DNA of 64,000 nucleotides from Setoptus koraiensis. Lineage: Eukaryota; Animalia; Arthropoda. Below are positions 1 through 30,844 of this stretch, in pieces. A program made the translations under genes and the position numbers. The notes beneath the pieces are model-generated. The model worked only from the letters and a program-made list of their open reading frames with translations, had not been told where the DNA came from and made no database searches. Location of the stretch: assembly GCA_048013815.1 (NCBI GenBank), contig CM106586.1:21948001-22012000 (forward strand). The letters are read 5' to 3'. The first letter of the stretch is position 1; each line of letters begins with the position of its first letter.

Positions 1-1
1 A

Positions 2-6249: not shown

Positions 6250-6331
6250 ACTCGTGATAAAGTATACCCAGTATCCATCAGCTTATTGTTATAAAATAAA
6301 TAAGATTAAGTTTTAAAATCGTGGTTTAATT

Positions 6332-6413
6332 TTTATTCGGTTAAGAATTATTTCAATCACATTCCTTTTTTTACGGTATGTACAATTTTTAAGGCAAAAG
6401 AAAACAAATCATT
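6332..6413 (-). promoter_or_regulatory. EGFR-A 3' UTR cassette: Pumilio element TGTACATA (6384-6377), K-box core TGTGAT (6361-6356), AATAAA (6337-6332)
   Basis: Motifs read directly; same order and spacing in the EGFR-B 3' UTR. Confidence 0.6.
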
Positions 6414-6509: not shown

Positions 6510-9500
6510 TCATACAGCGGTCTCATCGGGTTTGGTATAGGAGTTTGAGTCGCTAATATGCTCGCTTGATGACAAATCGTCGCTGGTTGATCTCTTGGAG
6601 TATTGATCAATCGGTGTGTGCTGTTGATAGTAGTTATTGTATTTCATGTGATACTCAGGATTGTTGACTCCGTTGATGTCCATTGAAATGATGTTCATCA
6701 TGTAGTTGGGATCAACAAAATTTACTGATGGTAAAATGTAATCATCGTCATCCACAGGTAAATTGAGATCATCGGTGGGTTGTGCAGTGAGGGGCGTTCT
6801 CGGATAAAGGATCTCGTGGTTGTTGTAAAAATCGAAATCACTGAGAAACCTTTTTCCGTCTTGATATGGCAATGTATCGAAATTAGGCACAGATGGGTTA
6901 TGATTACTGTAACTGCTAGCATTCTTGTTGTAATTATTAATATCATCAACAGAGAAGGTGAAGTTTTGAATCTCGCAATTCTTAGGCTTCCTTGGCGACT
7001 TGACGAAATCGAATGCCATATTAACACATGGTGTCAGGGGATATGGTAAATCGTTCGAACGTCTTTCCGTAGGAGAATTCATGCTATCACCTAGTTGTGG
7101 GTAGTTTGCGAAACGTTTTAACCTGTCACCCGGTATCACTAAATATCGCAATGGATCACGAGAGTACTTTTTGAAACTATCAACTAGATCAACAAACGAT
7201 GGCCTGTCTTCTGGTTGCACCATCCAGCAGCTAGTCATTGTGAGAAAGACGTCGATGCTAGCGTACTCTGGTTGCGTCAATCTTCCACCACCAATCACAA
7301 ACTTGGGAACTTCATATGCCTTCATATCATGATACGGCAGTTTTCCATAGGTTAACAACTCCCACACAGTAACACTGAATGCCCAAACGTCGCTCTTGTG
7401 AGTAAATATCCTCATCTGCAAGCATTCTGGCGCGAGCCATCTCACTGGCACCTCACCTCCACTTGATCGATATTCGCCTTCATTAGTTTCCAAAAGTTTT
7501 GCTAATCCAAAATCGGTTATTAATACACGTCCAGGTTGTTGCACAAGCACATTTCGAAGCGCCAAGTCTCGGTGAACAATTTTACTTGCTTCCAGGTATG
7601 CCATACCCTCCGCGATCTGTACGCACCATTTGAGTAGATATTCAGAATTGATGCATTCCTTGTGTTTCTCATCCCTAACAAATTCCGCCAAACATCCTAG
7701 CGGCATCAGCTCTGTGACTAGCATTAATCTAGATGTCATACATAAGCCTAGTAACTTAACTAAATTTGGATGATTGACACTGGCCATCAATTTAGCTTCC
7801 TCTAAGAAATCTTTGTTCATGTTAGGCTGAGCTCCATCTCGCAATACTTTAATGGCTACAGGACGAAAGTTTGACTTGTTCTCGAACCATTGTCCTTGAT
7901 AAACAATACCACCAAAGCCCTCGCCCAGTTTTTTACCCTCTCTTAGTTCGCATTCCTGGATGATTCTCAACTTAGCTAAATTCGGCTCAATGTTTGATGG
8001 CTGTAAGGGATCGTTATCGTCGAATCCGCTCATTCTCATCGTCAGTTTTGCTGTGTGCTCCTCAGATCTTACCCTCTGACACTTGTATGCAAAAAATAAG
8101 ACTAGCGATACTATAATTAAACTCAACGTCATGGCAATACCTTGTGATGTGCTTACGGTATGATCAGATACGAGGAGTTCAGAGATCGATTTGTCTTTGT
8201 CGGAGCAATAAGGATCCTCAACATTTACTATAACCCTGAATGGTTTACTTTTGGGGCACTGTTCTGTGCAATTGAACTCTGATCCTGAATCCGGTCCTGA
8301 GCCATGGAAGACTTTGAATTGCCTGCACGCCAAACAATCTGCATCAGTTGGTCCTGTGCATCCGTTACAGCTATAAGAACACTGAGAGCACTTTTTACCA
8401 TTAGGATAATGATCCCTCGGACATTGGTCCTCACATTGTTCAAAGACTTCATATTTTGCACACTCGCAAACAGACGTGTGAATGCCCATCGCTGTGCATG
8501 TCTTACATCGGTGATGACATTTACGACAATTATTGTGTTCTAAATAGTATCCAGTCGGGCATTGGTCCTCTGATTTAATGCAATAATCTGTAACACTGGG
8601 GTCGGTCGAACTAATGATGGCTTTTTGGCATGAGTTACAACCGTGAGGTCCAAGCCTGTTGAGTGGGCCAGTGCAGCCTCTCTCGGCAGCGCAACTCTCG
8701 TGACAAGCCTCACAAGATTTCGATGAATTGCTATATTTGGAAACGGGGCATACTTGTACGCAAAAAGGTCCATCTCGAACGTTCTTGCATTTTTTACAAT
8801 CCGCTGAAGTTGGTCCGTGGCATCCGTTCGCACATTCTTCGTGACATCTCTGGCAAGTATTATTACCGGCATCATATGAACTGATTTGATTTGTTTCGCA
8901 GTCCCTCACACAATGCCCATCATCAAGCTTGAAGTTTTTACATGATAAGCATTCGTCAGATTTAGGTCCCCAGCACCCGTCTCGAGAGCATTGCTCATGG
9001 CAAACAAGGCCTTGGTTTTTACATCGTATCGGATCTGCATTGAGTTTAACTGCGACTTCGCGTGGAAAATCAGAGTTACCTTGAGTTAGCCTGGTCCAAT
9101 TGATTGCTGAAGCGAAACATAGATCCGGATTCTCGACAATTGCTACTTTTCCAGATCGAATGTGTTTTAGAGATCGCAAATTTAGTGACACCAACGATGT
9201 CTTCAATATGTTCAAAGTTGTCAGCATATCGGTAGTTTGGCGTCCGCCAATTGTCACTAGGTTTTGAAAGCACGATAAGTTTTTAAAGTCTGAGTGGTTT
9301 GCCTGTATATTGAGAAATCCAGTAATACTTTTCAGAGTATTGAAAACCTCTAATTTTGAAGGATGCAATGGAGGATATCTAGCTCCCAGAGTCATGTTGG
9401 GATAAACTTCTGTGTAACCATTAAATGAGGTGTCCAATATGGTGATGGATCCCTCGATTTGTGTGCAGTTTCTAAAAGATTCTATGTTGCCTGAGTGTAC

Positions 9501-10748
9501 TGTGTCGACACCTTGGCATTCTTTCGGGCATGGACCAATACATGGTACGCATTCGCCTCCTTGATTTTGCTTGTTAGGTGGACAGGTTTTAACACACGCT
9601 CCATTGTCTCGAAGTAAATGATCGGGGCAGTTTTTGACACAATTAGTACCGTACGCGTATTTGGCTTCTGGATTGTTTTCCCATGAAAAAGTGGAGGGAT
9701 TGTACCTCATCATGGAGGGGCACTCTTGCCTGCAGACACCGTCGTCGTAGAAATTTTTGCATGCCAGACAATCGCTTTGTTTTGGGCCAGTGCAACCGCC
9801 CGCACAAAAAGAATGGCAACACTCGCCTGATTTTTGGCCATAACATCCACCGCGGCCACAGTGAGGACTACAATTTTTCCTGGTCATCTCTTGGCACATT
9901 TGTGGTTCGTCTGACCAGCAGCCATTGACGCACGAAGAGCATGGACAATTGTCAATTGGAACGCTGTTGTTGAAATAATAGAAAGTTCTAGCGTCTGGCC
10001 CGCTGAGTATTTCCTCCCACGCGATGCTCTTGATGTGGCACATGTTTGGACTCTCATGGATGCCCACATTGCCCACTAGAATATCACGTAGTTTTGGCAT
10101 CTCTAAATTTTTCGTCGTGCTAGATGTGACCAACAGTGCATATTTGTCGTCTGTCATGGACATGGTGCTGAAAAGTTCTCTGCCGCGTATTATTTGCAAA
10201 TTGTGCATTTTGATTTTGGGCACATTAACATAGGCTATCAGTACATAGCCGGTGACCTCTCTGATGGAATTGAGAAAGCTGAGATCTACGTCGGGCTGAA
10301 GCCATGTTATTTCTAGATTGCCGTCGACATAGGTACAATTGGTGTACCTGTCGCGAATATTTTGATAGTGGTGATCTTTGTTTTGCAACTTAGACAGTCT
10401 ATTGCTCGTTCCGATGCAGATCTTTTTCTTGAAGTTGTCCTCTTGCAGCGACGATTGTTGCTGCTGCTGCTGCAGCCTGCCGTTGCCGTGATGAGAGGGC
10501 AACTTGTGCAGAGTGGATGATTGTATTGTGGGCAAAACATGTGGCAAATAGGTCCATGTTCGATTGGGCAATTTCTTGGGCGGCTCTAAATAGGACGATG
10601 CTAAACTAGTGATGCTAATGGCGTTGCTACTCTTGTTGTTGTTGCCGTTGACAATAACAAACTTGGTTGATGATAATAACAAGTGATTAAATATAAACAA
10701 TAACAATAAATATAGCGTATAACTAATAGAGTTGTCTTTGAGTTTCAT
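6510..10748 (-). CDS. EGFR: Epidermal growth factor receptor, paralog A (1412 aa, intronless)
   Basis: Signal peptide; L1 (YTNCTYVDGNLEITW), furin-like Cys-rich, L2 (ITGFLNIQ), Cys-rich IV and extra invertebrate Cys-rich region; TM; Tyr kinase (VAIK, HRDLALRN, DFG, SDVWAF); tail with DDDDYILP, NNPEY and terminal ETAV PDZ-binding motif. Confidence 0.96.
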   Translation of the reverse strand: MKLKDNSISYTLYLLLLFIFNHLLLSSTKFVIVNGNNNKSSNAISITSLASSYLEPPKKLPNRTWTYLPHVLPTIQSSTLHKLPSHHGNGRLQQQQQQSSLQEDNFKKKICIGTSNRLSKLQNKDHHYQNIRDRYTNCTYVDGNLEITWLQPDVDLSFLNSIREVTGYVLIAYVNVPKIKMHNLQIIRGRELFSTMSMTDDKYALLVTSSTTKNLEMPKLRDILVGNVGIHESPNMCHIKSIAWEEILSGPDARTFYYFNNSVPIDNCPCSSCVNGCWSDEPQMCQEMTRKNCSPHCGRGGCYGQKSGECCHSFCAGGCTGPKQSDCLACKNFYDDGVCRQECPSMMRYNPSTFSWENNPEAKYAYGTNCVKNCPDHLLRDNGACVKTCPPNKQNQGGECVPCIGPCPKECQGVDTVHSGNIESFRNCTQIEGSITILDTSFNGYTEVYPNMTLGARYPPLHPSKLEVFNTLKSITGFLNIQANHSDFKNLSCFQNLVTIGGRQTTDMLTTLNILKTSLVSLNLRSLKHIRSGKVAIVENPDLCFASAINWTRLTQGNSDFPREVAVKLNADPIRCKNQGLVCHEQCSRDGCWGPKSDECLSCKNFKLDDGHCVRDCETNQISSYDAGNNTCQRCHEECANGCHGPTSADCKKCKNVRDGPFCVQVCPVSKYSNSSKSCEACHESCAAERGCTGPLNRLGPHGCNSCQKAIISSTDPSVTDYCIKSEDQCPTGYYLEHNNCRKCHHRCKTCTAMGIHTSVCECAKYEVFEQCEDQCPRDHYPNGKKCSQCSYSCNGCTGPTDADCLACRQFKVFHGSGPDSGSEFNCTEQCPKSKPFRVIVNVEDPYCSDKDKSISELLVSDHTVSTSQGIAMTLSLIIVSLVLFFAYKCQRVRSEEHTAKLTMRMSGFDDNDPLQPSNIEPNLAKLRIIQECELREGKKLGEGFGGIVYQGQWFENKSNFRPVAIKVLRDGAQPNMNKDFLEEAKLMASVNHPNLVKLLGLCMTSRLMLVTELMPLGCLAEFVRDEKHKECINSEYLLKWCVQIAEGMAYLEASKIVHRDLALRNVLVQQPGRVLITDFGLAKLLETNEGEYRSSGGEVPVRWLAPECLQMRIFTHKSDVWAFSVTVWELLTYGKLPYHDMKAYEVPKFVIGGGRLTQPEYASIDVFLTMTSCWMVQPEDRPSFVDLVDSFKKYSRDPLRYLVIPGDRLKRFANYPQLGDSMNSPTERRSNDLPYPLTPCVNMAFDFVKSPRKPKNCEIQNFTFSVDDINNYNKNASSYSNHNPSVPNFDTLPYQDGKRFLSDFDFYNNHEILYPRTPLTAQPTDDLNLPVDDDDYILPSVNFVDPNYMMNIISMDINGVNNPEYHMKYNNYYQQHTPIDQYSKRSTSDDLSSSEHISDSNSYTKPDETAV
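7109..8158. repeat. Inverted-repeat arm (1050 bp, 2 mismatches) pairing with 29021-30070
   Basis: Line-by-line reverse-complement comparison; mismatches only at 29970/7209 and 30048. Confidence 0.93.
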
Positions 10749-11227
10749 TTCATTTCATTTCATGTTGTTGTTGTCGTGAGCATTGTGTGTCGGCTGGGAT
10801 TCGATTTCATCATGTGTGTACGCTGGCTGCTACTTGCTGCAACTGGATGATGCGAGCGCACTGATGTTCGGTGTATCGGCGATATTTGCACTATTTGCAG
10901 CAGCACAATTGAATCGGTTGATTTGCAGCAGCAGCAGGTTGAATTAATTGAATCGTTGAGTGATATCACTTGTGCGAATAATTAAAATGATAAATATAAT
11001 GATGATAATAACTGCAAAATGCGAAATAAAATGGGACGCTGGCGCTCACTGGTGCAATTGCGGGCTGCGAAAGTTGGTCAACACATTGTTTGATCGAACG
11101 AATCGGATCGAATGTGAATATTGAATTTAGTTAGTGAACCACGACACACACACAAACTTTGCCTGCAGTTGCAGTGCACTGGTATGCGCCGCTCGGAATG
11201 CTTCTAGCCAATTGTCTGTGCTGGCAT

Positions 11228-11255
11228 CACACACACACACACACACACACACACA
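11228..11255. repeat. (CA)14 microsatellite
   Basis: Read directly. Confidence 0.9.
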
Positions 11256-12820
11256 AAGCCCCGCACACACACGCACACAGTTCGCTGGTCCATTATAGGG
11301 TGCAAATAACACCCTGCCTGGGGGATGCGCTGTGGCCGATCGGCAGCGCGCGCGCAACGCACATTCTCTGCCGCCAGTTGCGTGTGCGCCGCCTCTGCCA
11401 GGCCACGCACATGCTGCGCGCGAGCCGAGCCCACAAGTGCCGCCCGGCACACACAATGCGGCGCCTGTTCGGTGCGGCCACAATCTGTGCAATGGCGGCG
11501 CGCAAGTGCACCGGTGTCTGTGCAGGCGCACTGGCGGCCGCAGCGACAAGTAGCAGGCAACAAGTAGCAGCGACTGTGTTAGGCTGGCCGGGGGACGCGC
11601 CGACGCCGAGCGGCGCAGGCACAGCGAGCGCCAGCGACTGGCAGCGAGTCGCTGCCAGCGAGAGAGACTCTGGCAGAGCGAGAGAGTTTTGCCTCTGGTC
11701 AAACACAAGCCACTGGCCGAAGCGAATGACCAATGGCCATAAAATGATGCTGCGCGGTGTGTGCACTTGCCTCGATGGCACTGCATGCGCTCTTTATGAC
11801 CGTGCACTGCGGCCAATATCGCAGCAGCAGCGGCAACAACAACAGCGCCAGTGTCAGCTATGTTTGCCTTCATCAATTTGCCTGTTTGCTCAATCATGGT
11901 TGCCCTGCGACCAGCGCACACACACACGCACACACGCACAGGCACGGGAGAGGGCACAAAACAGAACCTTGAAACAAGTTGCTCTGGTGCCGATGTCTTT
12001 GCCCGTGTGTCCAGCGCTCGCTTCATCCCCTTCGTTCGGCGGTGTGCGCCGCCGAGAGAATCTCTTGCACCGGCCAACAAACGACCGCTGTGATTTCAAC
12101 TTGCGAGCTCCAACTCGCCACTGCCACTCACACTGCGAGCCTGCACAGTTTGCGCCCAGTTTCTTGTGCTCGTTGTGCCAGCAGCCACTGCTCAAAACTG
12201 CAACTTGTAACTGCAGTCCGGCGCTTGTTGTTGTGGCCAGTTGGCTCTGTGGCAACTTTCTTCTTTCCAGCTATTTGCACCGCTGCTTCTTCCAAAATCT
12301 ACCTGACACACACAGCCGATCGCTGGCGCTCTCAGCAATGGTGCTCTCAGCTATGGTGTGCCGAGCCGGTGCAATTTGCGTGGCTGCTCTTGGAGCTAGC
12401 AGAAATTCTTAGTCAGAACACTTAGAAATGAAAAGTTCGCCCGCGAATCATGCGCGAATTATGCGCGAGCAAAGTCGATGGGCGAAGCTTAGTTTGTGCG
12501 TCGGCCGTTGCGGGCTGCTCAACAGCACAAAGCTCTCAGAGTGCGCGCTGCAATGGATTATCGCAGGCAAGAGCAACAGCAACAGCAAAAGCAAAACTTT
12601 CCACTTTCTGCTGTTTTTGCCAACTAACATTTATTTTTTATTTTTATATAATAATAATTGTTGATTTCTATCGCCTATTACTTATCCTCATGGACGATCT
12701 GCGCGCACTCACACTGTGTGAGTCACACACACATGCAACACTGCCGATCGGCAATTTTTGATTAGCGCATTCGAATTAATGATGACGCCCTAGCGAGGCC
12801 TACATCGGCTCCTTCCACCA

Positions 12821-12880
12821 GCAACAGCAACAACAACAGCAGCAACAACAGCAGCAACAACGGCAACAACAACAGCAACA
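12821..12880. repeat. (CAA/CAG)n trinucleotide repeat
   Basis: Read directly; no supported coding frame. Confidence 0.85.
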
Positions 12881-14550
12881 AATATCTGCAACGTGCTCAC
12901 ATCCATCAATTGTGTTAGTCAGCACTTATATTCTAATGGCGGTACTTTATTCGATTCGAGCACCTATGCGCAACAAGTGACAACAATGACAAAGCCAATC
13001 GGTGCAGGTGAATCTTCACACGTACTATACGTGATGTGTGTGTGTGTGAGCGAAAGTTCACCAGGGGCGCTGGTGAGCCACCAGTGGCGACCAACTGCAA
13101 AGCACCAATGAGCATTCGCACTTGTGCTCTGTTTGTGCCAGCATGACAGCCCTGGCGGACTTTTCGGCATTCAACTATGGGTCATGGGGGTTCGAACCAT
13201 GGGTGAGTCGTCTTGAAATTTCCGACGACAATTAACACTCCCTTGTGAGGCCACCATTGTCTTGAACTATTCGGCAATGTGATTGGCGTGCCATTACAGA
13301 CAAAACACAACACAAAGTAATGTGAGCTTTATGGCAAAACAATTATGAATATTATTATTGGCTTGCTGTAGACGCCGCCGATGGCCAATTAGCGAGAACT
13401 AATTAATTTTGCAATTTTCTATCAGCGACCCAAGTTTCAACCAAGGTTTCCATCCAAACTTATTCATGTACTTGTATGTGTTGTGTTGTTGTTGGCAAAT
13501 GGCGAATGGCAGCTTCGCGCGAAATATGCTCACGGCAACCTGGGTGCAATTGCTATTGTCACCAATTAGCGAGAATTAGCGTGAACAAAACAACTCTGGC
13601 CCAACTTGAGCAGTTGCCCCACAACTTGTGAGTCATAAGCAACCGATTGCTAAAACAGACAGCGCCGTTTGTGTTGCTTCCTTCCGCCAACAACTTTGCC
13701 AGCTCGGCCATAAACTCGGCCCGGCCGTCGAAATTGACTAGTAATCAGCGGCAGCAGCAGCAGCACAGTCTATCAGCGATTTCTAACTAAGCATAAACTA
13801 TTAATGTAGTTATTGGACACCGCCAATATATCATGCGAGCGGCCTATCGCTCGATTGGCTCGGCTGAATGTTATTAATTAATGTTGCATGTTGTCGCCTC
13901 CAACTAAACTGTCTCTTGTGCTGCCAGTCGCATCGATTTGCCGTTCTATCTGTTTTGGCGATCTGTCTTTTGAAATTCGAGCGACAACCTATTATACAAT
14001 GTTATTTGTTAATAGCCGCACTGGCCGCCTAGTCGCAATGGCCGAATGTTGCCAAATGTGGCCAAACTGCCTACCGGGTCGGAATTCGTGTGCCCGGCAA
14101 TCGTTAGATGGATCGATTTTTGTACACGGCCGAGGATGAGCCGGCCAGCGCGGTGATACCAGATCGCAGACAGGCACTGGTAATTAAGATAAGCCCAAAG
14201 CAAATAGGCACACACACGTATCAATTATGTGGCCGGTCTCGGCCGCGCTCAACAGGACCCGACAGAGCATGAATAGCAGTGTCATGTCGAGACTGGCCCG
14301 ATGAATCAAATCTAATCGAATTCTCCATACATGTCATACGAGCGGACGTGCACGCAGCTCCGGCTGGCCAACAACTCTGGCCAGGCCCGTCTCGCAAGAC
14401 GCCCGCTGTTGTCCGGTAGCCGCATTCGACAAGGTCTCGGCACGGTGAATGGAGCACTGGACAAGTGGAGCATTGGCGAAAATAACATAATATAATCACA
14501 ACAAATATTGCAGCATGTTGCTGACGGCTGCCAGTTGCGCGACTCGAAAT

Positions 14551-14610
14551 CGCAGTGATACAACCCGAGTTGCAGTGATACAATCCGAGTTGCAGTGATA
14601 CAATCCGGAG
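14551..14610. repeat. 20-bp tandem repeat x3 (TGCAGTGATACAATCCGAGT)
   Basis: Units start at 14551, 14571 and 14591. Confidence 0.9.
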
Positions 14611-15183
14611 TGGCCTGCCGAGGTTGGCCCGACCAAACTGATTATTACTTTTGGAATCTCTCGCTCGCTCTGGCTCGGGCCTGAGCCGCTGGCTCGGCAC
14701 GGGCGCGCTCGCCGTTGCTTGGCATGGCGATTTCATTAAATCCGCCCGTCGCCGGCCAGTCGAGGGCGAGGGCGAATTCGTCGGGCCGGGACTTTGGCAT
14801 CTGTGCATCTATCTGTCCGTCCGACAGCGGGTGCGCTGAGAGACGGCCGATGCACTTTGCTGATTGCTCGGACACGATCGCATCTTGTCATTGTTGCGCC
14901 TGTTGCGCCTGTTGCACTTGTTGCACTTTGTTGCCCGTGATCCGCTGCAACCGACAAACAAACCGACAAACAAAATCGGACCACAAATTCGAGACTGTGA
15001 CAGCAGCAACAGCGCACACTGCAACTGCTCGCCAACTGCGGCCTGTCCGCGTCCCGAGCTGGGCCGCAGCGGGCAGGTTGGCTTCTCTGGCTCTGGTTGC
15101 GTCGTTGCCAGCGACACCAACCTGTTGCTTGCTCGTTTGTGGCCGTCGGCCAGCCAACGGGCGCACCGATCGCCGGCAGCCAG

Positions 15184-15236
15184 CGGCCAACTAGACGGCG
15201 GCCAACCAGACGGCGGCCAACCAGACGGCGGCCAGC
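15184..15236. repeat. 15-bp tandem repeat x~3.5 (CGGCCAACCAGACGG)
   Basis: Read directly. Confidence 0.85.
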
Positions 15237-15663
15237 TCCACAAGTGTTGCCGCTGCGTGCCACGGAACGAGCACCCAGCCGCACCGGCTAATGAGGTTCG
15301 GTGAGCTGACGGTGCCGGGCGGCACGGTAGCACCGAAACAGACTGCAAAAATTCAAAAGATTTTCAGTCAGCTCGCAGCTCGCTGTTCGGCATATCGAGT
15401 CGCAGTGATTATGTATCTACAGCGGTGATTGCGATTTCATTTTCACAGCTCATGCGAGCTGCCGAAGTGCTGCCATGTGAGGCCTGCGCTCCGTTGTCGA
15501 GCATTCTGGCCGCGAGAGTTTGGCGCGTATGGCCGGCACAGCCAGAGCCTGGGCCGGAGTCAGAGAACTCCTCTGATGGTTGTGCGAAGCCATTGTGTTC
15601 GTCCATGGAGCTCGTGCTCGGATTGCGCCGACTGTGCGTGTGCTCCGAGTTGCAAGTGGCCAG

Positions 15664-15726
15664 TTCGACGCTTCGACGTTCGCAGCTTCGACGTTCGCAG
15701 CTTCGACGCTCGAAGCTTCGACGCTC
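15664..15726. repeat. 15-bp degenerate tandem repeat x~4 (GCTTCGACGTTCGCA)
   Basis: Read directly. Confidence 0.8.
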
Positions 15727-17929: not shown

Positions 17930-17962
<33 letters not shown>

Positions 17963-20900: not shown

Positions 20901-23900
20901 ACAGGCAACAAGTGTCTCAGCGAAGGCATGTGAAGGTAATAGCAATATGCGAGACTCCAGCAATAATGAGAACTCAAAAGAAGATATGATGATGAACGAA
21001 AAAGATGATGATGCTGTACGGTGCACAGTGCTTGGTGCACGGTGCATGGTGCACAGAGTGCAACACGAACGCAAGTGACTGGTGCAAGTGCATCATCGCA
21101 CGGACAAACAACGGACCGCAGCCATATTAGTTGGCTGCTTCACTTCAACCTGTCACTACAGTTCTTACACCTGTCCAATGTGTTGCTGTTGCCGCTGCTG
21201 CGGCCATTCCAGTAAAATGGTCATCGTTGTCCATTGTTGTTGGTGCTGGCCTGGCCATTGTGCGCTCACCTGTGCACCGCGGCGGCGGCCGTAGCAGCTT
21301 CAGTGTGGTGCGTGGCCAGCAACCAATAATGCTGCACCAAACATGAGCTTGCATCGCGACAGTGGCTCCTCCTGCAGACGGCCATCGGCACTATTTGTGT
21401 GAAACAATGGCTGCTCACAATTGTCAGTGCCATTGTGAGTCAGTGGGCACTCAATGGGTGCTGAAGCCCGCAAACTAAAGTGACCAACACTGACCACCCG
21501 ATATGAGGCTCGCATTTCAGGCCGAGAGATGGCGCGGCGAGCGCACTCTTCAAACTTTTATTTTCGCCATTTTATATCTGTATTTGTACCCTATTAACGC
21601 GATGAGATCGCCCCCCCCCTCCCCGAAATCTCGTTGTGGGATGCTCTCGATGTGTAAGCGGCCCATACTGTGTACAGTAAAGTGTGGGTAAAGTGTAGGC
21701 CCACAATAGCACATGTAGGGTTAACACACCATTGGATGGTGACCAATTGGGCAAATCTGTTGCTGATCAACAGTTGACGACAACGAGCAGTATACAACAG
21801 CGATATTTAAAAGTATCAGAGCGCAACAAACAAAACAAATGTTTGCAATGATGCGAACGACGCGGAGAAAGTCCAAATGTTGCACCATGTGATCGCAGCG
21901 AGATTTTCGGACGGGACATTATCGTTCAAGTTGGAACTGGGCAGCAACACTGCAAGTCGAGCAACACTGCACGCCGACTCGAAGCGGTTGCCCACTAAAC
22001 CACTGCGACTTATGGCCCAGTAGAGTTCCAATGGGAGAGCCTGCTGGCCGCCAGACTATTAGGAGACAGTTCCCACGCTAGAATGTGTGTCCTTTAACTG
22101 TGGCCATCTTTCTTCTTCGGGCAACTGTTCTTTCTGCGTTCTTTGGCCCTCTCGGTGCGCTTCTCGCGAACACTTCTCGCACACTCGGCCAGCGCATACT
22201 TACTTACAGTGTATTTCGAAGCGATTCGAGGGATGGAACCAACATATGCATCGTTTAAAAAACTGGCAGAGAGAGAGTGCTCGTGCTCGCATAACACATT
22301 CGCTCGTTGTTGTTGTTGTTGTTCGTTGGCCGTCAACTGAACTGTTCGGTTGGTGAGCTGTTCGGTTATTGGACTGTTCGGTTAGCAAATTTAGAAACAC
22401 ACACACACACATGTACGTACATACATGAACGTGTATGTGTGTCAGAGATTAACACAGTGACCAGAGTACAATGGAAGAAATTGGAGCATCATGCGCGACA
22501 ACAAAGAACAACAACAACAACAACAAACTGCACGTTCGAACGGCAACAGTTGTGCGCCGGTCGCAACAATGAGCAAATTTCTTCTCCTTTCTCGACTACA
22601 AAAGCATTGCGACGAAAGCATATTTGCGACAATTCTTTTCATGCCAACTTTTGATGGGCTCAGCTTCTCGAGGCACCGAAGCAGACCCCTGAGCTTCTTG
22701 CTCTGCGCCCTGTCCAGCCATATATAGCAGTGCATTTGCAGCAGCGTACGCGCACTAGACAAATAGATTCGTCAGCGAACAGTCAGGTCACCAGGTGAGG
22801 GCGACCCAGTTGACGCCGCTACAAAAATGACCCCTCTAAAAAGCGAGCTGCTCCGACAGATTCAAGAAAGCAACCCAAAGATGCGTCGGTCGCGCAAGGC
22901 CAAGTCCCAGATTTAAACTTTAAACTGACTGTGCCTTTAAACCTGTGTCTACAGTTTATTTTGTGCTTTTTATGCTCTTATATTCTGATGTTCTTATATT
23001 CTTCTGTCGCATTATTCTGTCTCATTATGCTGTATTATTGCTGGCCCGGCTATATCTGCGCACACTAAAACATAACAGATAGTGAAAATTTGTCGTTGTT
23101 ACTAGAGGCTCGAACAAAGAGCCTTCAGCTAATTAATTGAGCAAAACCTATTTCCTCTCTCGACCTTGCTCTTCTTGCTGCACCAGCACCAATACACAAC
23201 AGGTCCGCTTTGCATCTTCTCGGTGCTCGCGGACACATTCAATACTATCCTATCATAGATTGTTATCTCTCGCTACAATTGCTACTTTCTTCTTCCACTG
23301 TTCTACACACTATACACCATTACCATCAGTATACCATTTACATAGGCAGACAACACACAGATACACTGGTTGGTCGAGGAAATGGATAAATGCTGTGACA
23401 GTGCGAGTGACCAGAGCTGCGATACAGCGCGAGTTGGCTAGTTTTGTACGACTCAGATTCAGCTATTTTGCACACTGGATAAAAGGGAGGAGCCAGCCCG
23501 AAGCCATGCTGGTTGTCATCTTCATCGGCACAGGTTAGGTTATTCACTTTCTTCGTTTTCTTCCGAAGGGCAGCTCGCCTTCGTTGATGATGAGCGCCGG
23601 CCAACAAAGAGACACACTCTTGTTATACCCGGTGCCTGCAAGCCTCTATAGCTCGCTCTTCATTTTGCTTCCTTCCAGTGCCCATCATGCATTCGATCCA
23701 GTGACAAGCGAAATAATCGAGTAAAATGAAATAATGAATGATGCTTGCGACGCCATCATTTCAGCCAGCCATTGTGAACCGCTGCTGCCGGGGAGATGTC
23801 TGCTGGCTCCCTGTCGAGGATTATCTCGTATTAAAAAACGAACTCCACGCACCAGCCCTACGGCTAGATGCCAATTCATACATGGTGCCACAGCCGAGAC

Positions 23901-25068
23901 ACACAATCTCCACTTGCCCACTGCTCCGATGCACAACCATTATAGCTGGAGCATGCCAATCTATGCCAGGTTGAGCTGCAGAAACGGTGTTGATTCAATT
24001 ATGGCCGGCAACAATCGCACATTCACCGATGCACTTACCTGGCGTAATATAAAATGCGTGTCGAAACTCGTGAGTGTGTGCTTATGAAGCTCAGCTTGCT
24101 AAGGTTGCCAGCGTGTTGGGCCACTCAACTCAAATCGAAGCCTCACCGCAGCATACGACAGCCAGCCACTAGTTAGACCGTCGAGTTTTGTGAATTGTTC
24201 GCGGCTAAAACCGCGACTGGCTTGTGTTGGTTTGCTGCGAGGTTTTTGCTGGTGCACTCTGGCGTTCGCATGGCAACACTTGTAAGCAAACACGGCGCTT
24301 ATTAGGTAGGTGTTTGCTCTCTCTCTCTCTCGGTTCAATATAATTTAATTGCCAGCGAGCTTTTTGTTTGTGCGAGCGCACTTCTTTATCTTGTTCTTCT
24401 TTTCGTTAATGGCGCCATCATTCGCACTTGCATGACAATAGATAGAGAATAGAGGTTGCTTGCGCAATCTTTGCCAGTTGCCACTTGTTGCTGGCTAGTC
24501 ATTAGTGGACACTCAAGCGATTGGGCGCCTCAGCCGGACACTCGTTGACATGAGTTAACGGTCAGTGCCGGCAGACTCTGGTTTGGTCTCAGGCCAGGCA
24601 ATTTCAGTGACAGTCAGTCGAGTGACAGTCAATGGAGCGACAGTGGACTGGGCGACAGTCGCTGTTACCTGGCGCGCTTGCGACCGCATCCAACCAACAA
24701 ACGAACTGAACCGAAAAGATTTGGAGGGTGTATTTGGCGAAAGAGAAGTTTTATTTTTGTTCTTGTTGGCGACAGGAGAAACAAGAGCCGAACGGAGCGT
24801 TGTTTTTGCCAAAAACTTTTTGGGCGAGCAACTGGGCTCGGTTGGCGAACAGTTGCAACTTACAAGTTGATATATACGTGTGTTGATATGTATACGTGTG
24901 ATAGCATCGAGGAAATGGGGAATTCGGTCGTCGTTATTGTTCGCCATTGGAGCGTTGCTCCATTGTCGAATTGTCAGTGGGCACACAGTTGCCCTAATCA
25001 TTGGTGGTGATGATGCGTGCGTGCACATGACAATATCTGTGCGTAGCGGCCCTTCTTGCCTCTCTACG

Positions 25069-25212
25069 ATCTACTTGCCCCCCTCTGCAATCTACTTGCC
25101 CCCCTCTGCAATCTACTTGCCCCCTCTATAATCTATTCGCCCCCCTCTGCAATCTACTTGCCCCCTCTATAATCTATTCGCCCCCCTCTATAATCTGTTC
25201 GGCCCCCGCCCC
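25069..25212. repeat. 20-21-bp minisatellite x7 (ATCTACTTGCCCCCCTCTGCA and variants)
   Basis: Units start at 25069, 25090, 25111, 25131, 25152, 25172 and 25193. Confidence 0.9.
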
Positions 25213-26277
25213 ACCTCCCGGCCGACTGTTGCTCGCTCCAGTTGTGTCCAGCATCGAATGTATATCGAATTGTATGCAGAGAGAGAACAATTACGATGCA
25301 GCAACAATCGACGCTGGCCACCGCACGCATCACACACACACACACGTGATAATATCATGAAGGTTGTGCGTACGCTCAACAGGCCTGCAATTGTGTCGAT
25401 GGCTTGTGTGAGTGCCACAGATAGACACAGAGAAGGCGCATACACTGTGAAAAAACACATAAAAAGTTCGCTAGTTGGCCGCTCCACTGTTGTCGCCCCC
25501 TCGCTCGCCCCTCTATTTGGGCCTGTCGCACGATGCGCAGGAGCGCCTTTTGTGCCGGCTCGCATGCTCCTCTGGCTCCTCCATTTTGTTTACTATCGCC
25601 GTAATGATCGCATATGCGTGGTATAAGTAGTGGTTCGGTTCAATGGCGTCAATGGTGGATCGCGCTTGCATGTGTGTACTTTAACACACACACAGTTTGT
25701 GGGTAACAGAGGCAAGCGAGAGCCACTGCACGGCGGCATCATCATCGCGGGCATCGTTCGCCGATACCAACCATTGCCTATATACAGCCCAGTGCACAGT
25801 GCTGGTACATTCACGCTACGCACACCGACCGAGCTGGCCCGTCTGATTCGACTCGATTGGATCATTCATGGAATTGTCGCGAGTTCATTCGATTCCAGCG
25901 CACGAATAGAATTGTTGTGTGAGTGTGTGTGTGTGTTTATCGGCCCACCAATACTGATCGCTGCTATGGCTACGACCGATAACAGCGCAACAATTAACAA
26001 CTAGCAACAAACGTACTATCGTTATTATTATTCCCATTGCCACTCACTCATTACACTTGCAACAACAAATATTATCAAATTCATCAATTATTATCAATTA
26101 TTGTCAACAGCATCGTCAATATTGTCCAATTCGAATTGCGAAATTCGAATCGCCAAATCCAAAGCTCAGCGTCAGCCTCAAATGTTGACACCATCGTCCA
26201 ACAATCAACAGTCAGCGAGCCGCGCCAAGATGCTCAAAACAAAGTTGTGAAACAATCAGAGCCAAGAATGAGCTGAG

Positions 26278-29200
26278 ATGAAAGCCAAACACAAGATACA
26301 TAGCTACTCTATTGGTTCATTATATTCATTAGTATTAATCAATTATTCACTTGTTATTCACCTATTATGTTCAACCTTAATTGTTACATCAGCCAGTGGC
26401 GGTAGCTTAACAAGATCCTCGGCGCTGTCCACGCCGTCCAAACAACATCATGTTGCCAGCCACAATTCAAATGATAATCACAACAAAAGTGCCTACACAG
26501 AAACGCTGCCACCCGTTGCGCAAAAAAGATTAATAACCAGTGATCTATTGAGCGATTGGACTTATCTGCCCAATGTTTTGCCACCTATTTCTACGCACCC
26601 CTATTACAAGCCCTCGTTGTATCACAGACCCTCGTCGTCAGCATCGGCGCACGTTAATCCGGTACACGGATATGCCAGCAACAGTTCGTCACAGACAGTC
26701 GCAACTCAGCAAGCCAGTGCAACAAATCGTGCATCGTCGTCGGCCTTGGAAGGAAAAAACTATGAAACTAAAATATGCATCGGAACAAGCGGCAGACTAT
26801 CCGCGCCCCAAAACAAAGATCACCACTATCAGAATATTCGCGACAGGTACACCAATTGTACCTATGTCGACGGCAATCTAGAAATAACATGGCTTCAGTC
26901 CGACGTAGATCTCAGCTTTCTCAATTCCATCAGAGAGGTCACCGGCTATGTACTGATAGCCTATGTTAATGTGCCCAAAATCAAAATGCACAATTTGCAA
27001 ATAATACGCGGCAGAGAGCTGTTCAGCACCATGTCAATGTCCGACGACAAATATGCACTATTGGTCACCTCAAGCACAATGAAAAATTTAGAGTTACCCA
27101 AGCTTCGTGATATTCTAATTGGTAGCGTGGGCATCTTTGAGAGTCCAAACATGTGTCACATCAAGACCATTGATTGGGAAGAGATTCTTAGTGGGCCCGA
27201 CGCAAAAACATTTTATTATTACAACAACACTGTTCCAGCAGAAAATTGTCCTTGCAACACATGCGATCATGGCTGCTGGTCCGACGAACCACAAATGTGC
27301 CAAGAGATGACCAGAAAGAATTGTCATCCTGCCTGCCAACGAGGTGGTTGTTATGGGCCTAAACAAACAGAATGTTGTAATGCCTTCTGTGCGGGCGGTT
27401 GCACCGGCCCAAAACAAAGCGATTGTCTGGCATGCAAAAACTTCTACGACGACGGTGTCTGCCGACAGGAGTGCCCCTCCATGATGAGGTATAACCCCAC
27501 AAGTTATTCATGGGAAACCAATCCTGGTGGTAAATATGCATATGGGGCAAATTGTGTTAAAAATTGTCCCGATCACTTACTTCGAGACAATGGAGCTTGC
27601 GTCAAGACCTGTCCGCCCAACAAGCAAAATCAAGGGGGTGAGTGCGTGCATTGTACAGGTCCATGCCCCAAGGAATGTCAGGGCGTCGACACAGTACACT
27701 CAGGCAACATAGAATCTTTTAGAAACTGCACACAAATAGAGGGATCCATCACCATATTGGACACCTCATTTAATGGTTACACAGAAGTTTATCCCAACAT
27801 GACTCTGGGAGCTAGATATCCTCCATTGCATCCTTCAAAATTAGAGGTTTTCAATACTCTGAAAAGTATTACTGGATTTCTCAATATACAGGCGAACCAC
27901 TCAGACTTTAAAAACTTATCGTGCTTTCAAAACCTAGTGACCATTGGCGGACGCCAAACTACCGATATGCTGACAACTTTGAACATATTGAAGACATCGT
28001 TGGTGTCACTAAATTTGCGATCTCTAAAACACATTCGATCTGGAAAAGTAGCAATTGTCGAGAATCCGGATCTATGTTTCACTTCAGCAATCAACTGGAC
28101 TAGGGTGACCCATGGTGAAGTCACAATAAAACTCAATGCAGACAGTAAAAGATGCGAGAATCGCGGTCTTGTTTGCCATGAGCAATGTTCTCAGGATGGA
28201 TGCTGGGGACCTCAATCTGACGAATGCTTAGCATGTAAAAACTTCAAGCTTGATGATGGGCATTGCGTGGAGGATTGCAAAAATTCACGCACAGATCCAA
28301 TTAGTTCGTACAATGCCGGTAATAATACTTGCCAACGATGCCACGAAGAATGTGCAAATGGATGCCACGGGCCAAATCACAAGGACTGTGAACAATGCAA
28401 AAATGTCAAAGATGGTCCCTACTGCGTACATGTGTGCCCGATTTCGAAATATAGCAATGCATCAAATCATTGCGTTGATTGCCATGAAAGTTGTGCTGGG
28501 GGCTGTACAGGCCCATCAAACAAAATTGGGCTTCTTGGATGCAATTCGTGTCATAAGGCTGTCGTTAGTTGGACTGACCCCAGCGTGATAGACTACTGTA
28601 TTAAGTTGGAGGATCAATGTCCAAGAGGGTACTATTTAGAACACAATACCTGTCGCAGATGTCATCATCGATGTAAGACATGCACCTCGGGGGGAACTCA
28701 CACATCTGTTTGCGAGTGTGCAAAATATGAAGTCTTTGAACAATGTGGAGACGAATGTCCAAGAGATCACTACCTCAATGGGACTAGGTGCACTCAATGT
28801 TCTAATAGCTGTAACGGATGCACAGGGCCAACTGATGCAGATTGTTTGGCGTGCAGGCAATTCAAAGTCTTCCGTGGCTCAGGACCGGATTCAGGATCAG
28901 AGTTCAATTGCACAGAGCAGTGCCCCAAAGACAAACCGTTCAGAGTGATAGTAAATGTTGGCGATCCTTATTGCTCTGACAAAGACAGGTCCATCTCTGA
29001 ACTTCTCATATCTGATCATGCCGTAAGCACATCACAAGGTATTGCCATGACGTTGAGTTTAATTATAGTATCGCTAGTCTTATTTTTTGCATACAAGTGT
29101 CAGAGGGTAAGATCTGAGGAGCACACAGCAAAACTGACGATGAGAATGAGCGGATTCGACGATAACGATCCCTTACAGCCATCAAACATTGAGCCGAATT

Positions 29201-30657
29201 TAGCTAAGTTGAGAATCATCCAGGAATGCGAACTAAGAGAGGGTAAAAAACTGGGCGAGGGCTTTGGTGGTATTGTTTATCAAGGACAATGGTTCGAGAA
29301 CAAGTCAAACTTTCGTCCTGTAGCCATTAAAGTATTGCGAGATGGAGCTCAGCCTAACATGAACAAAGATTTCTTAGAGGAAGCTAAATTGATGGCCAGT
29401 GTCAATCATCCAAATTTAGTTAAGTTACTAGGCTTATGTATGACATCTAGATTAATGCTAGTCACAGAGCTGATGCCGCTAGGATGTTTGGCGGAATTTG
29501 TTAGGGATGAGAAACACAAGGAATGCATCAATTCTGAATATCTACTCAAATGGTGCGTACAGATCGCGGAGGGTATGGCATACCTGGAAGCAAGTAAAAT
29601 TGTTCACCGAGACTTGGCGCTTCGAAATGTGCTTGTGCAACAACCTGGACGTGTATTAATAACCGATTTTGGATTAGCAAAACTTTTGGAAACTAATGAA
29701 GGCGAATATCGATCAAGTGGAGGTGAGGTGCCAGTGAGATGGCTCGCGCCAGAATGCTTGCAGATGAGGATATTTACTCACAAGAGCGACGTTTGGGCAT
29801 TCAGTGTTACTGTGTGGGAGTTGTTAACCTATGGAAAACTGCCGTATCATGATATGAAGGCATATGAAGTTCCCAAGTTTGTGATTGGTGGTGGAAGATT
29901 GACGCAACCAGAGTACGCTAGCATCGACGTCTTTCTCACAATGACTAGCTGCTGGATGGTGCAACCAGAGGACAGGCCATCGTTTGTTGATCTAGTTGAT
30001 AGTTTCAAAAAGTACTCTCGTGATCCATTGCGATATTTAGTGATACCTGGTGACAGGTTAAAACGTTTCGTATACTACCCACACTTAGGTGATAGCATGA
30101 ATTCTCCCACGGAGGAACGATCTTGTGAGTTACCGTATCCTCTAACACCCTGTGAAAAAATGGCATTCGATTTTAAATCACCACGAAAGAGCCACGATCG
30201 TCATTGCGAAACGCAAAATTTTACTTTCTCTGTCGAAGACATTAACAACAATAAGAAGAATGTTGGTAGCTATAGTAATCGCAAACCTATGAGACCTAGT
30301 GTTGATATGTTACCTTACCTGGATGGGAAAAGATTTCTCAGTGATTTCAATTTCCACGACGAACATGACTCCCTCTTCCCTAGAACGCCCATCATTAAAC
30401 AGCATGCTGATGATCTCAATTTACCTATGGACGACGATGGCTATATTCTACCATCAGTAAGTTTTATCGATCCAGATTATTCTATGAATATCAGCGAAGT
30501 CGACAATCCAGAGTATCATATGAAATACAATAACTATTATCAGCAGCATACCCCGATCGATCAATACTCCAAGAGGTCAACAAGCGAAGATTTGTCATCA
30601 AGTGATCGTGCTAGTGACTCAAATTCTTACACTAAGCCTAGCGAAACCGCTGTCTGA
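26278..30657 (+). CDS. EGFR: Epidermal growth factor receptor, paralog B (1459 aa, intronless)
   Basis: Same domain order as paralog A; kinase domain identical in protein sequence; tail with DDDGYILP, VDNPEY and terminal ETAV. Confidence 0.96.
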   Translation: MKAKHKIHSYSIGSLYSLVLINYSLVIHLLCSTLIVTSASGGSLTRSSALSTPSKQHHVASHNSNDNHNKSAYTETLPPVAQKRLITSDLLSDWTYLPNVLPPISTHPYYKPSLYHRPSSSASAHVNPVHGYASNSSSQTVATQQASATNRASSSALEGKNYETKICIGTSGRLSAPQNKDHHYQNIRDRYTNCTYVDGNLEITWLQSDVDLSFLNSIREVTGYVLIAYVNVPKIKMHNLQIIRGRELFSTMSMSDDKYALLVTSSTMKNLELPKLRDILIGSVGIFESPNMCHIKTIDWEEILSGPDAKTFYYYNNTVPAENCPCNTCDHGCWSDEPQMCQEMTRKNCHPACQRGGCYGPKQTECCNAFCAGGCTGPKQSDCLACKNFYDDGVCRQECPSMMRYNPTSYSWETNPGGKYAYGANCVKNCPDHLLRDNGACVKTCPPNKQNQGGECVHCTGPCPKECQGVDTVHSGNIESFRNCTQIEGSITILDTSFNGYTEVYPNMTLGARYPPLHPSKLEVFNTLKSITGFLNIQANHSDFKNLSCFQNLVTIGGRQTTDMLTTLNILKTSLVSLNLRSLKHIRSGKVAIVENPDLCFTSAINWTRVTHGEVTIKLNADSKRCENRGLVCHEQCSQDGCWGPQSDECLACKNFKLDDGHCVEDCKNSRTDPISSYNAGNNTCQRCHEECANGCHGPNHKDCEQCKNVKDGPYCVHVCPISKYSNASNHCVDCHESCAGGCTGPSNKIGLLGCNSCHKAVVSWTDPSVIDYCIKLEDQCPRGYYLEHNTCRRCHHRCKTCTSGGTHTSVCECAKYEVFEQCGDECPRDHYLNGTRCTQCSNSCNGCTGPTDADCLACRQFKVFRGSGPDSGSEFNCTEQCPKDKPFRVIVNVGDPYCSDKDRSISELLISDHAVSTSQGIAMTLSLIIVSLVLFFAYKCQRVRSEEHTAKLTMRMSGFDDNDPLQPSNIEPNLAKLRIIQECELREGKKLGEGFGGIVYQGQWFENKSNFRPVAIKVLRDGAQPNMNKDFLEEAKLMASVNHPNLVKLLGLCMTSRLMLVTELMPLGCLAEFVRDEKHKECINSEYLLKWCVQIAEGMAYLEASKIVHRDLALRNVLVQQPGRVLITDFGLAKLLETNEGEYRSSGGEVPVRWLAPECLQMRIFTHKSDVWAFSVTVWELLTYGKLPYHDMKAYEVPKFVIGGGRLTQPEYASIDVFLTMTSCWMVQPEDRPSFVDLVDSFKKYSRDPLRYLVIPGDRLKRFVYYPHLGDSMNSPTEERSCELPYPLTPCEKMAFDFKSPRKSHDRHCETQNFTFSVEDINNNKKNVGSYSNRKPMRPSVDMLPYLDGKRFLSDFNFHDEHDSLFPRTPIIKQHADDLNLPMDDDGYILPSVSFIDPDYSMNISEVDNPEYHMKYNNYYQQHTPIDQYSKRSTSEDLSSSDRASDSNSYTKPSETAV
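29021..30070. repeat. Inverted-repeat arm pairing with 7109-8158 (EGFR TM-juxtamembrane-kinase)
   Basis: As above; 29021-29969 shows no mismatch by eye. Confidence 0.93.
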
Positions 30658-30763
30658 GATCTCAAGTCAATGATAGGTTCTACTAATCACTCGAAAGTTG
30701 CAATCGAGTTTACTATCTACAGCTGCTACCCTTCTAGCAGTTACATTTCATGGATAATATCGA

Positions 30764-30844
30764 GATGATTTGTTTTTTTAGTCTCAAAAATTGTACATAT
30801 ATTAGAGAAAGGAATGTGATTGAATAAATTATTAGCAGAATAAA
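30764..30844 (+). promoter_or_regulatory. EGFR-B 3' UTR cassette: TGTACATA (30792-30799), TGTGAT (30815-30820), AATAAA (30839-30844)
   Basis: Motifs read directly; spacing identical to EGFR-A. Confidence 0.6.

What the first reader, a model, noticed from the sequence alone, without database searches (positions are those of the whole stretch)
7109..30070. Mosaic gene conversion between the inverted EGFR paralogs
Seen: near-identical tracts alternate with diverged ones. TM-JM-kinase 29021-30070 vs 8158-7109: 1050 bp, 2 synonymous mismatches, 949 bp perfect. L2 core 27685-28080 vs 9509-9114: 396 bp, 3 mismatches. L1 core 26809-27017 vs 10385-10177: 209 bp, 2 mismatches. Shorter tracts lie near 28805-28929 and 27390-27470. 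Between them third positions differ often and indels occur. Identity at synonymous sites cannot come from protein-level selection. Inference: recurrent ectopic conversion between inverted arms homogenises the ligand-binding cores and kinase while the Cys-rich domains, N-termini and tails stay distinct.
Basis: partly seen in the sequence, partly recalled or inferred. Interest (0 to 1): 0.8.

Follow-up and report, generated by a model that had tools for sequence, protein, structure and literature searches.

The report
Gene conversion between twin mite EGFR genes
A tiny plant mite carries two old, head-to-head copies of the growth-factor receptor gene EGFR, and three sharply bounded stretches (two ligand-binding cores and the kinase) have recently been copied from one gene to the other; this is a very clean but ordinary case of gene conversion between duplicates.

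Summary
The window holds two intact, intronless EGFR genes: A at 6510-10748 (minus strand) and B at 26278-30657 (plus strand). They lie head to head, 15.5 kb apart, in a 48.8-Mb, two-contig mite genome. It is not human.

The longest perfect run is 949 bp. An unsupervised change-point analysis returns the same six boundaries.

- **Silent sites:** fourfold-degenerate sites differ at 3 of 219 inside the tracts and at 91 of 209 between them.
- **Constraint control:** the first Cys-rich domain is as conserved across arthropods as the kinase, yet its silent sites are near saturation. Protein constraint therefore cannot explain the tracts.
- **Donor:** the genome has only these two EGFR copies, so each is the other's donor.

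Interlocus gene conversion is the best explanation (about 0.85). "Recurrent" is only partly shown. There are several separate tracts and weak evidence that their ages differ, but no divergence gradient at the edges. A single complex event is not excluded.

I found no GC-bias signal. No close relatives exist in any collection I searched, so the cross-species test could not be run. This scan has noted similar converted paralog pairs elsewhere in the same genome. This is a known kind of event, of modest interest.

The parts
6510..10748 (-). EGFR paralog A. Intact intronless ORF of 1412 aa with signal-peptide-like N-terminus, L1, furin-like Cys-rich, L2, domain IV, an extra Cys-rich region, TM, tyrosine kinase and tail.
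   Evidence: ORF list. Pfam Recep_L_domain x2, Furin-like, GF_recep_IV and PK_Tyr_Ser-Thr, all above the curated cut-offs. N-terminus read.
26278..30657 (+). EGFR paralog B. Intact intronless ORF of 1459 aa with the same architecture. 83% amino-acid identity to A over 1411 aligned positions.
29021..30070 (+). Conversion tract K in gene B, covering TM, juxtamembrane, the whole kinase domain and about 22 further codons. 1050 bp, 2 synonymous mismatches, 949 bp perfect (29021-29969).
7109..8158 (-). Conversion tract K in gene A, the partner of 29021-30070.
27685..28080 (+). Conversion tract L2 in gene B, almost exactly the second receptor L domain (B residues 470-601; the Pfam L-domain match is 483-609). 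396 bp, 3 synonymous mismatches.
9114..9509 (-). Conversion tract L2 in gene A.
26809..27017 (+). Conversion tract L1 in gene B, covering the first ~70 codons of the first L domain. 209 bp, 2 mismatches. Its left end lies 39 bp from where DNA homology between the genes begins.
10177..10385 (-). Conversion tract L1 in gene A.
28805..28929 (+). Short, older tract in gene B, in the membrane-proximal Cys-rich region. About 2.4% mismatches against 18% around it. The partner in A is about 8250-8374.
   Evidence: Scan statistic. Perfect runs 28828-28873 and 28875-28916.
27383..27462 (+). Marginal candidate tract in the first Cys-rich domain of B, with 4 mismatches in 80 nt. The partner in A is about 9732-9811. 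Not established.
   Evidence: P about 0.01. The test mixes silent and constrained sites.
10749..26277 (.). 15.5-kb spacer between the two divergently transcribed genes. GC 47-59%, many microsatellites, no Pfam-recognisable ORF and no Rfam match. No homology between its two halves beyond CAG/CAA repeats.
30773..30851 (+). Block downstream of the B stop codon that is 80% identical to 6325-6403 downstream of A. This is the outer limit of detectable DNA homology (26770-30851 vs 10424-6325).
   Evidence: (pair I7).

Best explanation
Two ancient, functional, head-to-head EGFR paralogs exchange sequence by non-allelic (interlocus) gene conversion. A break in one copy is repaired by homologous recombination using the inverted copy 16-20 kb away on the same chromosome or on the sister chromatid. 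This overwrites a few hundred to about a thousand bases without loss of the donor. Because the arms are inverted, the process causes no deletion.

At least three large tracts (first part of L1, L2, TM-JM-kinase) and one smaller, older one have been overwritten recently compared with the age of the duplication.

I infer, and have not shown, that these are long-lived 'islands' of concerted evolution. Conversion needs stretches of near-perfect identity. It can therefore continue only where earlier conversion, helped by protein constraint, kept the copies alike. It stops abruptly where the flanks have diverged to about 80% identity and carry indels. That would explain both the sharp edges and the near-saturated flanks. 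Purifying selection then removes conversions that would erase paralog-specific features in the Cys-rich regions and tails.
For: **Shown**
- The tract coordinates and mismatch counts are exact.
- Fourfold sites differ at 0/23, 2/60 and 1/136 inside the tracts, against 32/68, 35/91 and 24/50 in the first Cys-rich domain, the second and third Cys-rich regions and the tail.
- Nei-Gojobori pS is about 0.5-0.9 in most background windows and 0 across about 290 codons of the kinase tract.
- Permutation and change-point tests support the tracts.
- Protein constraint is not the cause. Windows 27310-27660 in the first Cys-rich domain score 0.85-0.92 for conservation across 23 other arthropod EGFRs, as high as the kinase. 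Even so, 39-48% of their identical-residue codons differ silently in three of the four windows; the fourth (13%) holds the marginal 27383-27462 candidate tract. The converted TM-JM window scores only 0.56.
- There is no third EGFR copy in the 48.8-Mb genome; the next best hit is 41% identical over the kinase only. The paralogs must therefore be each other's donors.
- Both genes look functional. Both ORFs are intact, all 81 of A's Cys columns are shared with B, derived changes are symmetric at 22:22, and background pN is far below pS.
- A and B are sisters on a long branch.

**Inferred**
- The background holds no perfect run longer than 46 bp, whereas the tracts hold runs of 118-949 bp. By established knowledge of minimal efficient processing segments and mismatch-triggered heteroduplex rejection, new conversion should be confined to the tracts.
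- The sharp edges without a gradient fit such hard boundaries.
Against: - No reads, no population data and no related species were available. Non-reciprocal transfer and tract-specific phylogenetic incongruence were therefore not tested (searches found no relative above 67% identity, even for the kinase).
- The 'several events of different age' claim is weak. The a-priori test gives P = 0.11; only post-hoc partitions reach 0.01.
- GC3 is identical in tracts and background (0.428 vs 0.430), so the GC bias that often accompanies frequent conversion is not seen.
- Tracts are on average in more conserved protein regions (0.82 vs 0.66). Selection and mechanism therefore cannot be separated.
Confidence: 0.85

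Rival explanations
1. One complex repair event, not recurrent conversion. A single break repair with repeated template switching between the sister chromatid and the inverted paralog, or a long heteroduplex repaired in patches, laid down all the tracts at once.
For: With the tracts as defined a priori, their divergences are statistically indistinguishable (2/1050 vs 5/605, P = 0.11). Edges are sharp, with no gradient of nested older events.
Against: The perfect 949-bp core differs from the L1 and L2 tracts taken together (P = 0.009) and from its own last 101 bp (P = 0.009). The 28805-28929 tract, at 2.4%, is older than the kinase tract (P = 0.01). All three are post-hoc tests. A first-time invasion between sequences about 81% identical and carrying indels is mechanistically unlikely by established knowledge, which favours a history of repeated events.
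Confidence: 0.15
2. Assembly or polishing artefact. Repeat collapse or short-read polishing copied one paralog's sequence over the other, so the true copies differ in the tracts.
For: Not testable here. If this genome is the published CLR, Flye and NextPolish assembly of a pooled wild sample that it resembles in size and chromosome number (PMC11920263; identity not verified), short-read polishing could have erased a few true differences inside already near-identical tracts.
Against: The arms are a 4.1-kb repeat at 86% identity, and a collapse would homogenise all of it rather than three domain-sized pieces with base-sharp edges next to 18-25% divergence. The tracts are not perfectly identical; seven scattered mismatches remain. 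Long reads span a 1-kb tract and its unique flanks, and reads that carry a difference map best to their own copy (inference). Other paralog pairs in the same genome show the same pattern.
Confidence: 0.05
3. Extreme selection on the nucleotide sequence itself (an embedded RNA element, an overlapping gene or a codon-level constraint) keeps silent sites identical without any exchange.
For: None found. The tracts do lie in the more conserved protein regions.
Against: No ORF of 100 aa or more overlaps the kinase tract on either strand, and there is no Rfam match. 135 consecutive fourfold sites without a change over about 1 kb, in three separate domains, has no known precedent as constraint. Equally conserved protein segments in the same gene are near saturation at silent sites.
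Confidence: 0.02

Closest known systems
Interlocus gene conversion between inverted paralog pairs, such as Drosophila Hsp70Aa/Ab, human RHD/RHCE and Y-chromosome palindrome arms
   Same: Inverted arms on one chromosome. Non-reciprocal homogenisation without deletion. Tracts of a few hundred to about a thousand bases. Identity extends to silent sites.
   Different: Here the background is near saturation at silent sites, so only islands are still converting rather than whole arms. The genes are receptor tyrosine kinases in a streamlined mite genome.
Mosaic or partial concerted evolution of duplicates, in which some exons or domains are homogenised and others escape, as in primate gamma-globin and opsin genes and Drosophila amylase and attacin genes; and the Walsh and Teshima-Innan 'escape from conversion' models (general knowledge)
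   Same: Alternation of near-identical and diverged blocks inside one gene pair. Boundaries sit next to diverged sequence or indels. Both copies are kept functional.
   Different: There are no introns here, so the tract limits are not set by exon-intron structure. The blocks fall on protein-domain scale within a single ORF.
Other converted paralog pairs noted by this scan in the same genome (Six4 twins s1-362438; MRPL13/mTERF3 inverted duplication s1-330800; several unchecked first-reader notes)
   Same: Same genome. Inverted or head-to-head duplicates with sharply bounded near-identical tracts.
   Different: The EGFR pair has the longest tract (1050 bp) and several tracts within one gene. I did not re-examine the other pairs.

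Membership tests
EGFR/ErbB receptor tyrosine kinase (arthropod type) | Ectodomain order L domain, furin-like Cys-rich, L domain, growth-factor-receptor domain IV, followed by one TM segment and a tyrosine kinase domain | tested here: met
   Pfam PF01030 (two stretches), PF00757, PF14843 and PF07714 all score above their curated cut-offs in both proteins. The hydrophobic TM segment is visible in the alignment.
EGFR/ErbB receptor tyrosine kinase (arthropod type) | Intact catalytic motifs: the VAIK lysine, the HRDLxxRN catalytic loop and DFG | tested here: met
   VAIKVL, HRDLALRN and ITDFGLA are present and identical in both copies in the alignment.
EGFR/ErbB receptor tyrosine kinase (arthropod type) | Best full-length matches are annotated EGFRs of other arthropods | tested here: met
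   Best named matches are EGFRs of the mites Halotydeus, Dermatophagoides and Brevipalpus, then ticks and spiders, at 49-57% identity. A and B form a clade within them.
Interlocus (ectopic) gene conversion | Tracts whose identity, including at silent sites, is significantly higher than in the flanking homologous sequence | tested here: met
Interlocus (ectopic) gene conversion | High identity not explained by constraint on the protein | tested here: met
   Equally conserved segments of the first Cys-rich domain have 39-48% silent differences in three of four windows, and the less conserved TM-JM segment has none.
Interlocus (ectopic) gene conversion | Phylogenetic incongruence: within tracts paralogs group by species, outside them by paralog | not testable with these tools
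   No relative closer than 57% (full length) or 67% (kinase) exists in the protein collection, and none in the metagenome contigs.
Interlocus (ectopic) gene conversion | Tracts are real in the DNA of individuals, as shown by spanning reads or an independent assembly | not testable with these tools
   No reads or second assembly were available.
Interlocus (ectopic) gene conversion | GC-biased outcome in frequently converted sequence (common but not obligatory) | tested here: not met
   GC3 is 0.428 in the tracts and 0.430 in the background.

The most novel reading that the evidence does not exclude
The EGFR mosaic may be one symptom of unusually permissive ectopic recombination in this mite lineage. 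Two factors could favour it. The MSH2 gene in this same window is reported, by an earlier follow-up that I did not retest, to lack its mismatch-binding and connector domains, which could weaken rejection of mismatched heteroduplex. Haploid males also lack a homologous chromosome as a repair template. Together these would let diverged paralogs keep converting and would produce the many converted pairs noted across this genome. A second, separate novel reading is that selection keeps the ligand-binding cores and the kinase identical, so that both receptors read the same ligands and can pair, while the Cys-rich regions and tails specialise.
Probability: 0.15. Interest if true: 0.65.

Novelty: new member of a known kind. 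Interest (0 to 1): 0.33.

Why it matters
The pair is a textbook-quality natural example of domain-scale concerted evolution inside a single uninterrupted ORF. The contrast is extreme, with silent sites near saturation next to 949 identical bases.

It has practical consequences:
- Trees or dS-based dating of these paralogs will be wrong unless the tracts are masked.
- Short reads will mis-map in the tracts.
- Any functional difference between the two receptors must lie in the N-terminal extension, the Cys-rich regions or the tail, because the L2 domain, the first part of L1 and the kinase are the same protein.

Taken with the other converted pairs in this genome, it gives a way to ask whether streamlined, haplodiploid mites with an altered MSH2 have elevated ectopic recombination. 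In itself it adds no new mechanism.

Tried and rejected
**Cross-species test.** Four searches were run: a full-length protein search, a tail-plus-kinase-end fragment (no hits), a kinase fragment (best 60-67% identity) and a metagenome locus scan (none). None found an eriophyoid relative, so per-domain gene trees could not be built. I did not use the large representative search, because three word searches had already shown that close kin are absent and the claim does not rest on absence.

**Third-copy donor.** Rejected: the genome holds only two EGFRs.

**GC-biased conversion.** No signal.

**Gradient of nested older tracts around the big tracts.** Not seen. Silent divergence is already at background level within 45 nt of the edges.

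**Asymmetric decay of one copy.** Rejected: derived changes are 22:22 and A's cysteines are all shared with B.

**Genes or RNAs in the 15.5-kb spacer.** Ten ORFs gave no Pfam match and Rfam gave nothing.

**Spacer homology.** The two halves share only CAG/CAA repeats.

**Literature.** No paper on EGFR duplication or gene conversion in Eriophyoidea was found. The Aculops genome paper mentions neither.

**Species identity.** The size and chromosome number resemble Setoptus koraiensis, but I did not verify this.

**Operators' rules.** The contig is a mite's, not human, so the human-contig rule did not apply. Both genes are intronless, so no spliced model or joining of exons was needed.
Full report
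**What is there.** The window lies at 21,948,001-22,012,000 of contig 2 of a 48.76-Mb genome assembled in two contigs. It holds two long uninterrupted ORFs in inverted, head-to-head orientation. Gene A is 6510-10748 on the minus strand (1412 aa). Gene B is 26278-30657 on the plus strand (1459 aa).

Both genes have the full receptor architecture: receptor L domain, furin-like Cys-rich region, second L domain, growth-factor-receptor domain IV, a further Cys-rich stretch, one transmembrane segment and a tyrosine kinase. All these domains score above the Pfam cut-offs. The VAIK, HRDLALRN and DFG motifs are intact, and both N-termini look like signal peptides.

The best named matches are EGFRs of acariform mites (Halotydeus, Dermatophagoides, Brevipalpus) at only 54-57% identity. 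Several features point to an eriophyoid mite: long intronless genes, a genome of about 49 Mb on two chromosome-sized contigs, and earlier notes of this scan. The published genomes of that group are described in the same terms (PMC7738191, PMC11920263). The assembly resembles Setoptus koraiensis in size and chromosome number, but I did not verify that. The contig is not human.

| Tract | B coordinates | A coordinates | Length | Mismatches |
|---|---|---|---|---|
| TM-JM-kinase | 29021-30070 | 8158-7109 | 1050 bp | 2, both synonymous; 949 bp perfect |
| L2 | 27685-28080 | 9509-9114 | 396 bp | 3, all synonymous |
| L1 | 26809-27017 | 10385-10177 | 209 bp | 2, one synonymous and one Pro/Ser |

DNA-level homology runs from 26770 to 30851 against 10424 to 6325, at 86% overall. 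It starts where L1 starts and ends about 190 bp past the stop codons. The first roughly 160 codons can be aligned only as protein, around a shared WTYLP motif.

**Is it more than chance?** A codon alignment shows 235 synonymous, 218 non-synonymous and 75 gapped codon columns, distributed very unevenly.
- Nei-Gojobori pS in 30-codon windows is about 0.5-0.9 in most background windows, which is at or near saturation. It is 0 over about 290 consecutive codons of the kinase block.
- Fourfold-degenerate sites differ at 0/23 (L1 tract), 2/60 (L2 tract) and 1/136 (kinase tract). In the first Cys-rich domain, the second and third Cys-rich regions and the tail they differ at 32/68, 35/91 and 24/50.
- Shuffling mismatch positions never gives a perfect run above 105 bp, against the observed 949. 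Shuffling fourfold sites never gives a run without a difference above 50 sites, against the observed 135.

**Why it is not protein constraint.** I scored each residue for conservation across 23 other arthropod EGFRs. The tracts are on average more conserved (0.82 against 0.66), but the relation is loose. The first Cys-rich domain at 27310-27660 scores 0.85-0.92, as high as the kinase. Even so, 39-48% of its identical-residue codons differ silently in three of its four 30-codon windows; the fourth window (13%) holds the marginal 27383-27462 candidate tract. The converted TM-juxtamembrane window scores only 0.56 and parts of L2 only 0.68, and both have no silent differences. No overlapping ORF or Rfam element explains the identity.

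**Donor and status of the genes.** A six-frame search of the whole genome finds only these two EGFRs. The next hit is another kinase at 41% identity. The two genes are therefore each other's template.

In a tree with 37 other EGFRs they are sisters on a long branch. The duplication thus arose within this mite's lineage, but long ago given the silent-site saturation.

Both copies look functional. The ORFs are intact and all 81 of A's cysteine columns are shared with B. Derived substitutions are symmetric (22:22), and background pN is about 0.05-0.2 against pS of about 0.5-0.9.

**Mechanism.** The pattern is the signature of non-allelic gene conversion. A break in one copy is repaired from the inverted paralog, which overwrites a patch of 0.1-1 kb. 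The inverted orientation means such exchange cannot delete the interval, and a crossover would only flip the 15.5-kb spacer.

What is shown is the existence, limits and youth of the tracts. What is inferred is their history.

Evidence on whether there were several events:
- The tracts are separated by near-saturated sequence containing indels.
- The 28805-28929 tract (2.4% mismatches) is older than the kinase tract (P = 0.01).
- The perfect 949-bp core differs from the L1 and L2 tracts taken together (P = 0.009) and from its own 3' end (P = 0.009).
- Those three tests are post hoc. The a-priori comparison of the kinase tract against L1 plus L2 gives P = 0.11.
- There is no gradient of divergence away from the edges, so nested older tracts are not visible.

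I therefore rate 'conversion' at about 0.85. For 'recurrent over a long time', the reading I prefer is the following. The background has no perfect run longer than 46 bp, whereas the tracts have runs of 118-949 bp. By what is known of minimal processing segments and mismatch-triggered heteroduplex rejection, conversion can now start and spread only inside the tracts and is stopped at the diverged flanks. That makes the tracts self-maintaining islands with hard edges. It fits the sharp boundaries, and two ends lie close to heterology: the L1 tract starts 39 bp from the start of homology, and the L2 tract ends about 36 bp before an 18-bp indel. A single complex event with template switching remains possible (about 0.15).

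**What the data do not show.**
- GC3 is the same in tracts and background (0.428 against 0.430), so there is no sign of GC-biased conversion.
- Whether selection favours identical ligand-binding cores and kinases, or merely tolerates them, cannot be told from one genome.
- An assembly artefact cannot be excluded without reads, but it is unlikely. A collapse would homogenise the whole 4.1-kb repeat rather than three domain-sized blocks. The tracts also keep seven scattered differences.
- If the assembly was polished with short reads, as the look-alike published assembly was, the exact counts of residual differences could be slight underestimates. That further weakens the age comparisons.

**Relatives and literature.** The protein word searches with the full length, the tail and the kinase, and the scan of metagenome contigs, found nothing closer than 57-67% identity. 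I found no paper on EGFR duplication or on gene conversion in Eriophyoidea. Within this scan, several other inverted or tandem paralog pairs of the same genome carry similar tracts, and two follow-ups read them as ordinary gene conversion.

**Verdict.** This is a new and unusually clean member of a well-known kind of event. Its value lies mainly in three things: a caution for dating and read mapping, a pointer to where the two receptors can differ functionally, and one data point for a possible genome-wide tendency to ectopic conversion in this mite.

Noticed in passing
window 10749-26277: The 15.5-kb interval between the two EGFR genes has no recognisable gene or RNA. It is GC-richer (47-59%) than the flanking genes (about 41-44%) and is full of short tandem repeats, including a 21/41-bp array at 25062-25196. 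Such a large gene-free interval is unusual for a genome described as having tiny intergenic regions. It may be shared or partitioned regulatory DNA for the divergent receptors.
   Followed up: partly
window 1-1762: An earlier follow-up of this scan (s1-367090) reports that the MSH2 gene here lacks the mismatch-binding and connector domains. Because MSH2 complexes also reject mismatched recombination intermediates, this could bear on how readily diverged paralogs convert in this genome. I did not retest it.
   Followed up: no
window 51784-60402 (-) and 41754-48969 (-): A 2872-aa intronless huntingtin homolog (Htt N-HEAT, bridge and C-HEAT domains) lies directly next to ORFs matching the HAP1_N domain of huntingtin-associated protein 1/Milton. 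Those are 47125-48969 (strong match) and 41754-44039 (weak match to the end of the same domain), possibly two exons of one gene. This is a curious adjacency of two proteins that are known partners in other animals.
   Followed up: partly
window 36695-36798 (-): Rfam finds a tRNA (53.9 bits) spread over 104 nt for a 71-position model, so it probably carries an intron or a long insert. ARAGORN does not call it.
   Followed up: partly
window 30773-30851 and 6325-6403: A 79-bp block about 115-195 bp downstream of both stop codons is still 80% identical, although neighbouring downstream sequence is at 35-55%. It could be a conserved 3'-UTR element or an old conversion remnant.
   Followed up: no
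window 26770-27270 / 10424-9920 and the tails 30071-30657 / 6510-7108: Derived amino-acid changes, polarised with 23 outgroups, are lopsided by domain: 10 in A against 1 in B in L1, and 3 in A against 9 in B in the tail. The whole-gene count is 22:22. Numbers are small, but this hints at complementary specialisation.
   Followed up: partly
window 4048-6249 (+): An intronless 733-aa glycogen synthase (PF05693, 1086 bits) lies convergent with EGFR-A, with only 260 bp between the two stop codons.
   Followed up: no
It is visible in the alignment. Its function is unknown.
   Followed up: partly
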